From positions 62,001 through 126,000 of the IMG/VR virus record IMGVR_UViG_3300047548_001236: 64,000 bases of DNA. One strand, given 5' to 3'. How positions within the stretch are numbered: the stretch's first letter is position 1; each line of letters opens with the position of its first letter. The translations under genes were made by a program, and so were the position numbers. Below, piece by piece: positions 10,917 to 11,170 of the stretch. The notes beneath the pieces were generated by a model. The model was not told where the DNA came from, ran no database searches, and saw only the letters and a list, made by a program, of their open reading frames with translations.

Positions 10917-11040
10917 TGGTATCCCCGCCAGGATTTGCACCTGGATCTCGATCTTCCAATGATATGCAGATTTGTTGCGGAAACAATCCATGTCTGGATC
11001 GACTTTTTGCTACGCGTGTTATCTGTTCCACCACGGGGAT
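10917..11040 (-). ncRNA. tRNA-like RNA 1 (124 nt) with anticodon loop replaced by an insert
   Basis: Acceptor ATCCCCG/CGGGGAT+ACCA, D arm GTG/CAC, T arm CCAGG-TGCAAAT-CCTGG. Confidence 0.8.
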
Positions 11041-11045
11041 ATTCT

Positions 11046-11170
11046 TGGTCTCGCCCCCAGGACTTGCACCTGGACCTCCTTTGAGTAAAAAAGAAAGCAG
11101 ATTTGTTGCTGAAATGAACCTTGGCAGTTTCACGTTTTTGCTGTTTGTGCTACTGTTACACCAAGGCGAG
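11046..11170 (-). ncRNA. tRNA-like RNA 2 (125 nt) with anticodon loop replaced by an insert
   Basis: Acceptor CTCGCCT/GGGCGAG+ACCA, D arm GTGTAACAGTAGCAC, T arm CCAGG-TGCAAGT-CCTGG. Confidence 0.8.

What the first reader, a model, noticed from the sequence alone, without database searches (positions are those of the whole stretch)
10917..11170. Two tandem CCA-ended tRNA scaffolds with the anticodon loop replaced by a ~45-nt module
Seen: each RNA has a 7-bp acceptor stem, A73 and encoded CCA, a D arm lacking the GG, the same T stem CCAGG/CCTGG with a non-canonical T loop TGCAART (G55), and a small variable hairpin. The anticodon loop is replaced by the shared GCAAAAA...GCAACAAATCTGC module. 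They are 124 and 125 nt long and 5 nt apart. Unlike circularly permuted YrlA, they keep normal tRNA ends, so RNase P and CCA enzyme could process them and they might be aminoacylated. Inference: decoys for anticodon nucleases or uncharged-tRNA sensors, or adaptors tethering the DUF2828 protein to tRNA-handling enzymes. Standard tRNA scanners would probably miss them.
Basis: partly seen in the sequence, partly recalled or inferred. Interest (0 to 1): 0.82.

Follow-up and report, generated by a model that had tools for sequence, protein, structure and literature searches.

The report
Phage Ro-like protein's tRNA-shaped RNAs
Two 125-nt RNAs of a T4-like jumbo phage have a full tRNA body and CCA end, but where the anticodon loop should be they carry the signature of a large phage RNA family (absent from Rfam) that sits beside a Ro60-like protein gene, so they are most likely phage Y RNAs, not decoding tRNAs.

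Summary
On the minus strand, 11046-11170 and 10917-11040 are two tandem tRNA-shaped RNAs. Each has a 7-bp acceptor stem, A73, an encoded CCA, D, variable and T arms, and a 39-nt insert in place of the anticodon loop. ARAGORN and Rfam do not call them.

They are not orphans. Relatives lie beside homologues of the adjacent DUF2828 gene in many phages, including cultured Cronobacter S13, Aeromonas Aeh1, Felix O1, Klebsiella KP2025, Ralstonia RSP15, Mycobacterium Lumos and Listeria LP-083-2. The predicted DUF2828 fold matches Ro60/TROVE over its full length.

The shared signature is a 7-bp helix flanked by UUCAGCAA on one strand and an A-run on the other. In most relatives the RNA is circularly permuted: the ends lie in that helix and a loop closes the acceptor stem, as in YrlA. 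The window RNAs are the tRNA-ended version of the same fold. Helices covary strongly, and the D-loop and T-loop change together.

Two tRNA-less copies of the signature also lie in the window, one in the DUF2828 mRNA leader.

Best reading: Y-RNA-like partners of a phage Ro-like protein. RNA-protein binding and the biological role are inferred, not shown. This is a new variant of a known kind.

The parts
11046..11170 (-). RNA A: tRNA-shaped, 125 nt. Acceptor 11164-11170 / 11050-11056, A73 at 11049, CCA at 11046-11048, T loop UGCAAGU at 11062-11068.
   Evidence: Sequence. CM R1 128.7 bits. Helices covary across homologues.
10917..11040 (-). RNA B: tRNA-shaped, 124 nt, ends in ACCA. T loop UGCAAAU at 10933-10939.
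   Evidence: Sequence. CM R1 143.1 bits. Near-identical copies in L177 and L183.
11100..11138 (-). 39-nt insert of RNA A replacing the anticodon loop: AAAACG, helix UGAAACU/AGGUUCA with loop GCCA, then UUUCAGCAACAAAUC.
   Evidence: The module helix covaries at 5 of 7 pairs.
10969..11007 (-). 39-nt insert of RNA B: AAAAGU, helix CGAUCCA/UGGAUUG with loop GACA, then UUUCCGCAACAAAUC.
9132..10592 (-). DUF2828/DUF7788 protein, 486 aa: a Ro60-like helical-repeat (TROVE-type) domain plus a vWA domain with an intact MIDAS motif. Proposed protein partner.
   Evidence: Pfam. phrog_850 'RNA-binding protein' 1e-137. AF2 pLDDT 78. Foldseek top three hits are 9kop, 2nvo and 1yvp_B, E about 1e-8. D291/S293/S295/T361/D393 invariant.
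10606..10661 (-). tRNA-less, permuted copy of the module in the leader of the DUF2828 mRNA: AGGUUAG-GUUCAGCA ... AAAAA-CUAACCU-G, ending just before the Shine-Dalgarno GAAAGGA. An alternative local hairpin lies at 10638-10659.
   Evidence: The strict pattern hits only twice in the window and at most once in 1.38 Mb of unrelated DNA. The end helix covaries among homologues: AGGUUAA/UUAACCU in L115, AGGUUGA/UCAACCU in L117, AGGUUGG/CCAACCU in L121.
10680..10708 (-). Sigma-70-like promoter TTGACA-17-TATGAT that would start the DUF2828 mRNA about 15 nt upstream of the leader module.
   Evidence: 11 of 12 matches. A consensus match only.
6846..6910 (-). Second tRNA-less module copy (mini RNA): UGGAUGG-UUCCAGCAAACC..UAUGCAU..hairpin..CGCAAAAAGC-CCAUCCA-G, about 170 nt upstream of the tRNA array.
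   Evidence: The promoter scan found no promoter here.
10673..10906 (-). 77-aa ORF between RNA B and the DUF2828 promoter. Function unknown. A small ORF lies at the same place in L144; the ORF is absent in L183.
13771..15024 (-). Context: multifunctional CCA-adding/repair enzyme (PolyA_pol head plus HD domain).
   Evidence: NF008137, 434.7 bits against a cut-off of 451.
11983..12603 (-). Context: TilS N-terminal (PP-loop) catalytic domain only, 206 aa.
   Evidence: TIGR02432, 115 bits against a cut-off of 93.6.
5262..6676 (-). Context: array of 13 ordinary tRNA genes.

Best explanation
RNAs A and B are the tRNA-ended members of a widespread phage family of Y-RNA-like non-coding RNAs. The family travels with the Ro60-like DUF2828 protein.

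The family signature, here called the module, is a 7-bp helix (consensus YNAWCCW/WGGWUNR) with UUCAGCAA(C) on one flank and an A-run on the other. I propose it is the docking site for the ring-shaped DUF2828 protein. In the window RNAs the module replaces the anticodon loop.

The rest of each RNA is a true L-shaped tRNA mimic. Its 7-bp acceptor stem, A73 and CCA should make it a substrate for RNase P, for 3' trimming and for the phage CCA-adding/repair enzyme encoded 2.6 kb upstream of them. That would leave a free, protected ACCA end. As in Ro60-Y RNA particles, the RNA would then tether or gate the protein, and the tRNA-like end would recruit tRNA-handling or RNA-decay/repair factors during infection.

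The same module in the leader of the DUF2828 mRNA would let the protein feed back on its own synthesis.

Shown: the structure, its conservation and covariation, the permutation series, the gene linkage and the Ro60-like fold.
Inferred: RNA-protein binding, processing, feedback and the biological role.
For: 1. Linkage. RNAs found by a DNA pattern alone lie on the same strand as, and next to, a DUF2828 homologue in L177, L120, L132, L217, L115, L221, L121, L117, L200, L198, L183 and L144.
2. Conversely, in 18 DUF2828-anchored loci (129 kb) a module scan gives 34 hits on the gene strand and 1 on the other. The background is 5.5 per 100 kb.
3. Members occur in cultured phages: S13, Aeh1, Felix O1, KP2025, RSP15, Lumos and LP-083-2.
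4. The DUF2828 model's only full-length structural matches are Ro60/TROVE: 9kop, 2nvo and 1yvp_B, E 2e-8 to 8e-8, TM 0.47-0.58. The MIDAS motif is invariant.
5. Structure. tRNA-ended set: 97.4% paired, 18 of 23 pairs compensatory, 0 of 500 shuffles. Permuted set: 91% paired, end helix 100% paired.
6. Tertiary covariation. A T loop UUC[GA]A.U always goes with GG in the D loop; a T loop UGCAA.U always goes with AG. This held 14/14 and 4/4, and in the cultured phages read by eye.
7. Natural circular permutation. The same sequence blocks occur in the order 3' half - ACCA - loop - 5' half in L116, L121, L198 and L117. So the module helix and the tRNA body are both needed, but chain connectivity is not.
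8. A73 is invariant in 18 of 18 members, and CCA follows it in 15 of 18, even inside the closing loop of permuted members.
9. Precedent. M. smegmatis YrlA is cut by RNase P and receives CCA while bound to Ro60 (PMC4201824). Thermus phage phiLo has two Y-like RNAs upstream of its Ro60 gene (PMC12135203).
10. RNA-repair context. The window encodes a CCA addition/repair enzyme. An RtcB-like ligase lies 1.3 kb downstream of the homologue in the Listeria phage. Mycobacteriophage LeBron encodes a Ro-like protein together with an RNA ligase and a polynucleotide kinase (PMC13148394).
Against: - There is no expression, end-mapping or binding data.
- The anticodon-type stem core GCA/UGC is invariant, so covariation neither supports nor refutes it. 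It is broken in L198 and L115.
- The Ro60-binding motif GNCGAA of YrlA is absent, so any binding mode must differ.
- KVP40 has the protein but no detectable RNA within 2.5 kb.
- No good promoter lies directly upstream of RNA A. The only sigma-70-like match abuts the mature 5' end.
- Single-sequence folding energies are not exceptional.
Confidence: 0.6

Rival explanations
1. Decoy or sponge. The free ACCA end and tRNA body soak up a host factor that acts on tRNA acceptor ends or senses tRNA, such as an acceptor-end nuclease, a nucleotidyltransferase or acetyltransferase toxin, or a stringent-response sensor. The module would serve only for stability or for something else.
For: - A73 is invariant and CCA is kept even in permuted genes.
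- The elbow is maintained by coordinated D-loop/T-loop change.
- The genes sit in a phage tRNA-maintenance neighbourhood.
Against: - It does not explain why the module, not the tRNA body, is the universally conserved part.
- It does not explain why tRNA-less modules exist.
- It does not explain why the RNAs track the DUF2828 gene and its strand.
- A decoy for anticodon nucleases is excluded in practice, because there is no anticodon loop.
Confidence: 0.15
2. Processing or stability punctuation. The tRNA-like bodies are RNase P/Z cleavage signals, and the end helices are 5' or 3' stabilisers that shape polycistronic transcripts of the tRNA region. No dedicated protein partner is involved.
For: - The elements lie between genes, in mRNA leaders and inside tRNA arrays.
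- RNA B ends 10 nt before the ribosome-binding site of the 77-aa ORF.
Against: - Pure punctuation would not need invariant loop sequences (UUCAGCAA, A-run) from Listeria and mycobacterial phages to T4-like phages.
- It would not need invariant A-U and C-G pairs in the helix.
- It would not need co-inheritance with one protein family.
Confidence: 0.12
3. Real decoding tRNAs whose 39-nt insert is an intron or an expanded anticodon arm, for example suppressors.
For: - All other tRNA features are present.
- With introns allowed, ARAGORN calls RNA A as tRNA-Phe(aaa) with a 33-nt intron.
- Pipelines annotated relatives as tRNA-Ser and tRNA-Val.
Against: - The intron calls are incoherent. RNA B and L144 are not called. 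L005 is called Ser(gga) with a 50-nt intron at another position.
- No cut leaves a 7-nt loop with U33 and a purine at 37.
- The insert is the best-conserved part of the RNA.
- Permuted relatives have their chain ends exactly there.
- Minimal relatives have no tRNA body at all.
Confidence: 0.03
4. Decaying pseudo-tRNAs of no function.
For: Non-canonical D and T loops, and no anticodon.
Against: - Compensatory changes occur in all four counted helices.
- The D and T loops change in a coordinated way.
- The RNAs are conserved across phages whose partner proteins are only 30-50% identical.
Confidence: 0.02

Closest known systems
YrlA-type bacterial Y RNAs (Rfam RF02553; Chen et al. 2014, PMC4201824)
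   Same: - A non-coding RNA encoded beside, and on the strand of, a Ro60-type ring protein gene.
- A protein-binding helix joined to a tRNA-like domain with D, T, variable and acceptor arms.
- Often two or more RNAs per locus.
- Permuted relatives of the window RNAs have the YrlA topology exactly. Two give sub-threshold YrlA hits: L117 at 39.2 bits and Lumos at 39.3 bits, against a gathering score of 69.
   Different: - The partner is DUF2828, which has the Ro60 fold but is not annotated as TROVE, the criterion used in that study.
- The conserved motif is UUCAGCAA plus an A-run, not GNCGAA.
- The window RNAs have their ends at the acceptor stem with an encoded ACCA, and the binding helix is closed by a tetraloop.
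- Rfam gives no hit on them even at E<=10.
Mycobacterium smegmatis YrlA after processing (PMC4201824)
   Same: A 7-bp acceptor-like stem is cut by RNase P and receives CCA, giving a Ro60-bound RNA with a free tRNA-like CCA end. This is what ACCA inside the acceptor loop of L116, L121, L198 and L117 predicts.
   Different: There the product is a two-piece RNA made from a permuted gene. The window RNAs would reach the same end state as a single chain, with CCA encoded in the gene.
Thermus phage phiLo phiRo60 with Yrl1 and Yrl2 (PMC12135203)
   Same: A phage-encoded Ro60-type protein with two Y-like RNAs just upstream of its gene. 9kop, the top structural match of the DUF2828 model, is labelled only 'Crystal structure of the Trove domain'. 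I assume, but did not check, that it comes from that work.
   Different: Those RNAs carry the CGAA motif in a stem-bulge, and no tRNA-like domain is mentioned in that paper. The protein is a recognised Ro60 homologue.
Circularly permuted genes for tRNA-like RNAs: two-piece tmRNA of alpha-proteobacteria and permuted tRNA genes of the red alga Cyanidioschyzon (from my own knowledge, not checked here)
   Same: The same fold is encoded in two gene orders in different lineages.
   Different: Those RNAs work in translation. Here the permutation links a Y-RNA topology to a tRNA topology, and no decoding function is apparent.
Ordinary and intron-containing tRNAs
   Same: Acceptor stem, A73, CCA, D, variable and T arms, and the elbow contacts.
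   Different: There is no anticodon loop or coherent anticodon. The insert is conserved and structured, and it is shared with RNAs that have no tRNA body.

Membership tests
tRNA (RF00005) | Cloverleaf with a 5-bp anticodon stem and a 7-nt loop carrying U33, an anticodon and a purine at 37 | tested here: not met
   A 39-nt structured insert takes the place of the loop. No coherent anticodon appears even when introns are allowed.
tRNA (RF00005) | Reaches the Rfam gathering score (29 bits) or is called by ARAGORN | tested here: not met
   No hit at gathering score or at E<=10. Not among the 13 ARAGORN calls.
tRNA (RF00005) | 7-bp acceptor stem, discriminator base and CCA; D and T arms with D-loop/T-loop contacts | tested here: met
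   The elbow is kept in a variant form (AG with UGCAA) that covaries with the canonical form (GG with UUCGA).
YrlA / bacterial Y RNA (RF02553) | Encoded within a few kb of a Ro60 (TROVE) gene, on the same strand | tested here: inconclusive
   The position and strand rule is met. The neighbour is DUF2828, which matches Ro60 by fold but matches no TROVE model by sequence.
YrlA / bacterial Y RNA (RF02553) | GNCGAAN0-1G motif near the 5' end, in the Ro60-binding stem | tested here: not met
   Absent from A and B by inspection. The conserved motif is UUCAGCAA plus an A-run.
YrlA / bacterial Y RNA (RF02553) | 5' and 3' ends pair to form the protein-binding stem; the acceptor-like stem is closed by a loop | tested here: not met
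   A and B have their ends at the acceptor stem. The feature is met by their relatives L116, L121, L198, L117, L115, Felix O1, KP2025, RSP15 and Lumos.
YrlA / bacterial Y RNA (RF02553) | Reaches the Rfam gathering score (69 bits) | tested here: not met
   No hit on A or B. The best relatives score 39 bits.
YrlA / bacterial Y RNA (RF02553) | Physically bound by the Ro60-type protein | not testable with these tools
   Needs co-immunoprecipitation or a gel-shift assay.
Ro60/TROVE proteins (for the partner gene) | Ring of helical repeats followed by a vWA domain with a MIDAS motif | tested here: met
   Foldseek full-length matches to 9kop, 2nvo and 1yvp_B. DxSxS..T..D is invariant. The model has only moderate confidence (pLDDT 78).
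tmRNA | tRNA-like domain plus a tag reading frame and pseudoknots | tested here: not met
   ARAGORN and Rfam call no tmRNA here.

The most novel reading that the evidence does not exclude
The tRNA-ended members are processed like tRNAs and actually charged. The combination of an invariant A73 (18 of 18 in the window's clade), a long variable arm and no anticodon fits synthetases that ignore the anticodon. The phage would then load its Ro-like ring onto an aminoacyl-tRNA mimic and deliver it to EF-Tu, the ribosome or a tRNA-repair enzyme. That would be a new kind of tRNA-based ribonucleoprotein, created in evolution by circular permutation of a Y RNA, probably through a tandem duplicate. The hairpin tip reads ..CCWG-N-WGG.., which looks like a fusion of the 3' and 5' ends of the permuted form.
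Probability: 0.12. Interest if true: 0.9.

Novelty: new variant of a known kind. Interest (0 to 1): 0.72.

Why it matters
Ro60-Y RNA particles are a classic RNA-surveillance system, yet their bacterial and phage biology is thinly known.

- **A second Ro-like lineage with its own RNAs.** DUF2828 is present in 711 of about 50,700 phage records. The RNAs have their own recognition motif and are missing from Rfam.
- **A natural experiment.** The same fold is encoded with its ends at either pole. That shows which parts matter, and it links the Y RNA and tRNA topologies directly.
- **Testable at the bench.** Members occur in cultured phages (Felix O1, Aeh1, S13, mycobacteriophages and Listeria phages), so the RNA-protein complex and its role in keeping translation or tRNA pools working during infection can be tested.
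- **Practical annotation value.** It explains odd entries such as 113-122-nt 'tRNA-Ser', 'tRNA-OTHER' and 'tRNA-Val' genes in RefSeq phage records.

Tried and rejected
- **DNA similarity to GenBank phages.** blastn with the 800-nt region found nothing. The family only appeared through pattern, covariance-model and protein-anchored searches.
- **T-arm 17-mer scan of viral contigs.** It gave 79 loci; only the window's own contig (L057) was recognised as a member, and the others were not examined. Not used further.
- **Looking within 3 kb of close DUF2828 homologues L002-L004.** No tRNA-shaped RNA there. In those contigs it lies elsewhere, in a tRNA cluster (L116, L119).
- **Intron-bearing tRNA reading.** Rejected because ARAGORN -i gave incoherent results.
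- **Alternative 3-bp hairpin GCA-ACAAAUC-UGC as a mini anticodon loop.** Its flanks do not pair in most members, while the outer GU(A)GCA/UGCAU pairing extends to 5 bp. All three trinucleotides are invariant, so covariation cannot decide.
- **Weak model hits just upstream of DUF2828 in L006 and L014.** About 10 bits; judged not to be tRNA-shaped members. Their leaders do carry the minimal module.
- **A motif hit at 59674-59747 (+) and two others inside coding regions.** Judged to be chance.
- **A sigma-70 promoter for the mini RNA at 6846-6910.** The hexamers TTGACG and TATAAA are only 15 nt apart and the scan does not call them. My earlier notebook entry saying '17' is wrong.
- **Sequence search of the protein against the PDB.** It gave only a weak vWA hit. 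The Ro60 relation is visible by fold only.
- **Literature.** Searches for DUF2828, DUF7788 and 'Ro-like RNA binding protein' found no description of these RNAs. Subscription journals are not covered.

Full report
**1. The observation**

The window is part of a 282,855-bp viral contig, IMGVR_UViG_3300047548_001236. It carries T4-type genes: UvsY, UvsW and a gp19-like tail tube.

On the minus strand, 11046-11170 (RNA A, 125 nt) and 10917-11040 (RNA B, 124 nt) lie 5 nt apart. Both have:
- a 7-bp acceptor stem, A73 and an encoded CCA
- a D arm whose loop has AG where tRNAs have GG
- a long variable region with a small hairpin
- a T arm CCAGG/CCUGG with the loop UGCAAGU or UGCAAAU

Where the anticodon loop should be, a short stem (AGCA/UGCU in A; GU(A)GCA/UGCAU in B) encloses 39 nt. 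This insert consists of an A-run, a 7-bp hairpin closed by a GNNA tetraloop, and the strand UUUCMGCAACAAAUC. About two thirds of the aligned columns of A and B are identical, and the hairpin differs by compensatory changes.

ARAGORN tRNAs at 5262-6676 but not these two. Rfam 15 finds nothing at gathering score or at E<=10. Folding energies alone are not special, with z of -0.9 and -1.25. The case therefore rests on comparison with other sequences.

**2. Surroundings**

All of the following are on the same strand:
- a multifunctional CCA-adding/repair enzyme (13771-15024)
- a cytidylyltransferase-like protein (12898-13326)
- a TilS N-terminal domain protein (11983-12603)
- small ORFs, then RNA A and RNA B
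- a 77-aa ORF
- a TTGACA-17-TATGAT promoter (10708-10680)
- a 486-aa DUF2828/DUF7788 protein (9132-10592), which belongs to phrog_850 'RNA-binding protein'

An AlphaFold model of this protein, built on 16 homologues, has pLDDT 78 and pTM 0.74. Its only full-length matches in the PDB are three Ro60/TROVE structures: 9kop, 2nvo (Deinococcus Rsr) and 1yvp_B (Xenopus Ro with RNA). These have E of 2e-8 to 8e-8 and TM of 0.47-0.58. The vWA MIDAS residues are invariant. The neighbour is therefore a Ro60-like ring protein, although sequence searches do not say so.

**3. Relatives and the permutation**

- One homologue with canonical D and T loops and no encoded CCA lies about 70 nt upstream of a 77%-identical DUF2828 gene (L005).
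- A pattern taken from the 3' half of the RNA was scanned over viral and metagenome contigs. After filtering it gave 18 members.
- In most of them the gene is circularly permuted. The order is: module-helix strand, UUCAGCAACAAA, UGCAU, variable hairpin, T arm, acceptor 3' strand, ACCA, a short loop, acceptor 5' strand, D arm, GUAGCA, A-run, the other module-helix strand (L116 and L121; L117 and L115).
- That is the YrlA topology. The ends lie in the protein-binding helix and the acceptor stem is closed.
- The window RNAs, L177, L183, L005 and L144 have the opposite connectivity: the ends are at the acceptor stem and the helix is closed by a tetraloop.
- The tip of that hairpin reads ..CCWG-N-WGG... 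This looks like the 3' and 5' ends of the permuted form joined together, as would arise at the junction of a tandem duplicate. This is inference.

**4. Linkage to the protein**

- tblastn with the window protein finds a homologue adjacent to the RNA, on the same strand, in 12 of the RNA-bearing loci. It is upstream in some and downstream in others.
- In GenBank phages the protein occurs in 711 records. Hosts and groups include T4-like phages, Felix O1-like phages, mycobacteriophages (annotated 'Ro-like RNA binding protein'), and Listeria, Staphylococcus, Enterococcus, Campylobacter and Bacillus phages.
- tRNA-ended tandem pairs occur in Cronobacter phage S13. They are annotated as tRNA-Ser (121 nt) and tRNA-OTHER (113 nt).
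- They also occur in Aeromonas phage Aeh1, where one is annotated tRNA-Val (122 nt).
- Permuted members with a tRNA-like domain, and minimal members that are only helix + ACAGCAA + A-run + helix, lie beside the gene in Felix O1, Klebsiella KP2025, Ralstonia RSP15, Mycobacterium phage Lumos and Listeria phage LP-083-2.
- A scan for the permuted or minimal form gave 34 hits on the gene's strand and 1 on the other strand in 18 anchored loci. The background is 5.5 per 100 kb. Loci of the giant-virus homologues are at background.
- KVP40 has none within 2.5 kb.

**5. Structure support**

- On 10 tRNA-ended members from four lineages, the acceptor, D, module and T helices are 97.4% paired. 18 of 23 pairs show changes on both sides. 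0 of 500 shuffles reach this, and slid controls give 40-49%.
- On 8 permuted members the figure is 91%. The end helix is 100% paired, and 5 of 7 acceptor pairs are compensatory.
- Two pairs of the module helix never vary: an A-U and a C-G. The flanking UUCAGCAA and A-run are conserved in sequence, which is what one expects of a protein contact surface.
- The anticodon-type stem core GCA/UGC is invariant, so it is untested.
- The D loop and T loop change together. UUC[GA]A.U goes with GG and UGCAA.U goes with AG, without exception in the parsed set and in the cultured-phage members read by eye. This points to selection on the tRNA elbow.
- A73 is invariant in the 18 members. CCA follows it in 15, including inside the closing loop of permuted genes whose other loop letters differ.
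- In L132 and L200 about 135 nt are inserted right after ACCA. [quoted passage not shown]

**6. More copies in the window**

A strict clade-specific pattern hits the window twice. It hits 1.38 Mb of supposedly unrelated loci four times, and three of those four are evidently overlooked family members.
- One window hit is the leader of the DUF2828 mRNA (10606-10661): AGGUUAG-GUUCAGCA ... AAAAA-CUAACCU-G, followed directly by GAAAGGA and the start codon. In L115 the same position holds a full permuted RNA with a tRNA-like domain. The end helix covaries among L115, L117 and L121.
- The other hit is a 65-nt mini RNA at 6846-6910, upstream of the tRNA array.

A shared site in the partner RNAs and in the protein's own leader suggests feedback control. 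This is inference.

**7. Mechanism and rivals**

The best reading is that A and B are Y-RNA-like partners of the Ro-like protein in tRNA form. The module docks the protein. The tRNA body, matured by RNase P and kept intact by the CCA enzyme, is a stable handle that recruits tRNA-binding or RNA-repair/decay factors, or gates the ring.

The RNA-repair flavour is supported by three observations:
- the CCA repair enzyme in the window
- an RtcB-like ligase and an HD phosphohydrolase near the homologue in the Listeria phage
- the Ro-like protein, RNA ligase and polynucleotide kinase trio of mycobacteriophage LeBron, where the Ro-like protein alone is moderately toxic (PMC13148394)

The 2021 jumbo-phage survey notes that ROT/TROVE proteins occur in some jumbo phages, and that in cells they have tRNA-like partners. 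The passages I searched describe no phage RNA (PMC7824862).

Rivals, each weighed in its own entry, are:
- a decoy for factors that act on tRNA ends
- transcript punctuation
- an intron-bearing tRNA, rejected on the incoherent ARAGORN -i calls and because permuted genes place the chain ends inside the supposed intron
- pseudo-tRNAs, contradicted by the covariation

**8. Comparison and novelty**

- The RNAs work like YrlA-type Y RNAs but fail membership. They lack the GNCGAA motif, have the opposite chain connectivity, give no Rfam hit, and have a partner outside the annotated TROVE family.
- They are not tRNAs either.
- I found no description of them in the searchable literature. That literature excludes most subscription journals.
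- I rate them a new variant of a known kind.
- The tRNA-ended, CCA-encoding topology and the breadth of the underlying family are the new points.

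Noticed in passing
L132:5726-5989 (-) and L200:766-1027 (+): In two permuted relatives, about 135 nt with its own closing stem is inserted between ACCA and the 5' strand of the acceptor stem. There is no Rfam match. Its nature is unknown; a spacer, a mobile element and a ribozyme are all possible.
   Followed up: partly
L246:6890-7011 (Aeromonas phage Aeh1, NC_005260): Just before the two tRNA-ended RNAs lies a 122-nt RNA-like element with an 11-bp end stem, a D arm and two separate T arms (AACGGUUCGAUUCCGUU and CACUGGUUCGAAUCCAGU). 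It is not annotated.
   Followed up: no
L249:932-1483 (Listeria phage LP-083-2): A ROOL-like RNA (87.4 bits, below the gathering score of 99.1) lies 1 kb upstream of the DUF2828 gene. An RtcB-like ligase and an HD phosphohydrolase lie 0.6-1.3 kb downstream of the gene.
   Followed up: no
L007:2781-2853; L013:398-765; L015:56-419: In other DUF2828 loci the gene sits in tRNA arrays. One array includes a suppressor-type tRNA (anticodon UUA) 150 nt upstream of the gene. Two others include phage tmRNA genes.
   Followed up: no
window 11983-12603 (-) and 11718-12002 (-): The TilS-like protein is the N-terminal catalytic domain only (206 aa). The next ORF overlaps it by 20 nt in another frame. This may be a split or frameshifted gene, or a stand-alone PP-loop enzyme.
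   Followed up: no
window 5262-6676 (-): The 13-tRNA array has only seven amino-acid specificities: Ile, Glu, Tyr, Phe, Lys and Cys twice each, and Met once. This suggests a duplicated block.
   Followed up: no
window 10638-10659 (-): The inner part of the DUF2828 leader can form a local 9-bp hairpin (GUUAGGUUC-AGCA-GAACCUAAU) that competes with the long-range module helix for UUAG. It was flagged as terminator-like, and a matching local hairpin can be drawn in L002, L005 and L008. It may be a switch between two leader structures.
   Followed up: partly
L245:2863-3294 (Klebsiella phage KP2025, PP919962): An annotated 432-nt 'tRNA-Arg-TCT' spans the start of the DUF2828 gene. Only 2863-2937 looks like a tRNA. 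This is probably an annotation artefact.
   Followed up: partly
L176:3140-3246 (contig start): The contig begins with a sequence resembling an M13 forward sequencing primer directly fused to the RNA. This is probably a vector or assembly artefact, so the 5' part of this member was ignored.
   Followed up: no
window 1156-1653 (-) and 2049-2864 (-): A Macro-domain protein and an R2K-type ATP-grasp protein lie a few kb downstream of the tRNA array on the same strand.
   Followed up: no
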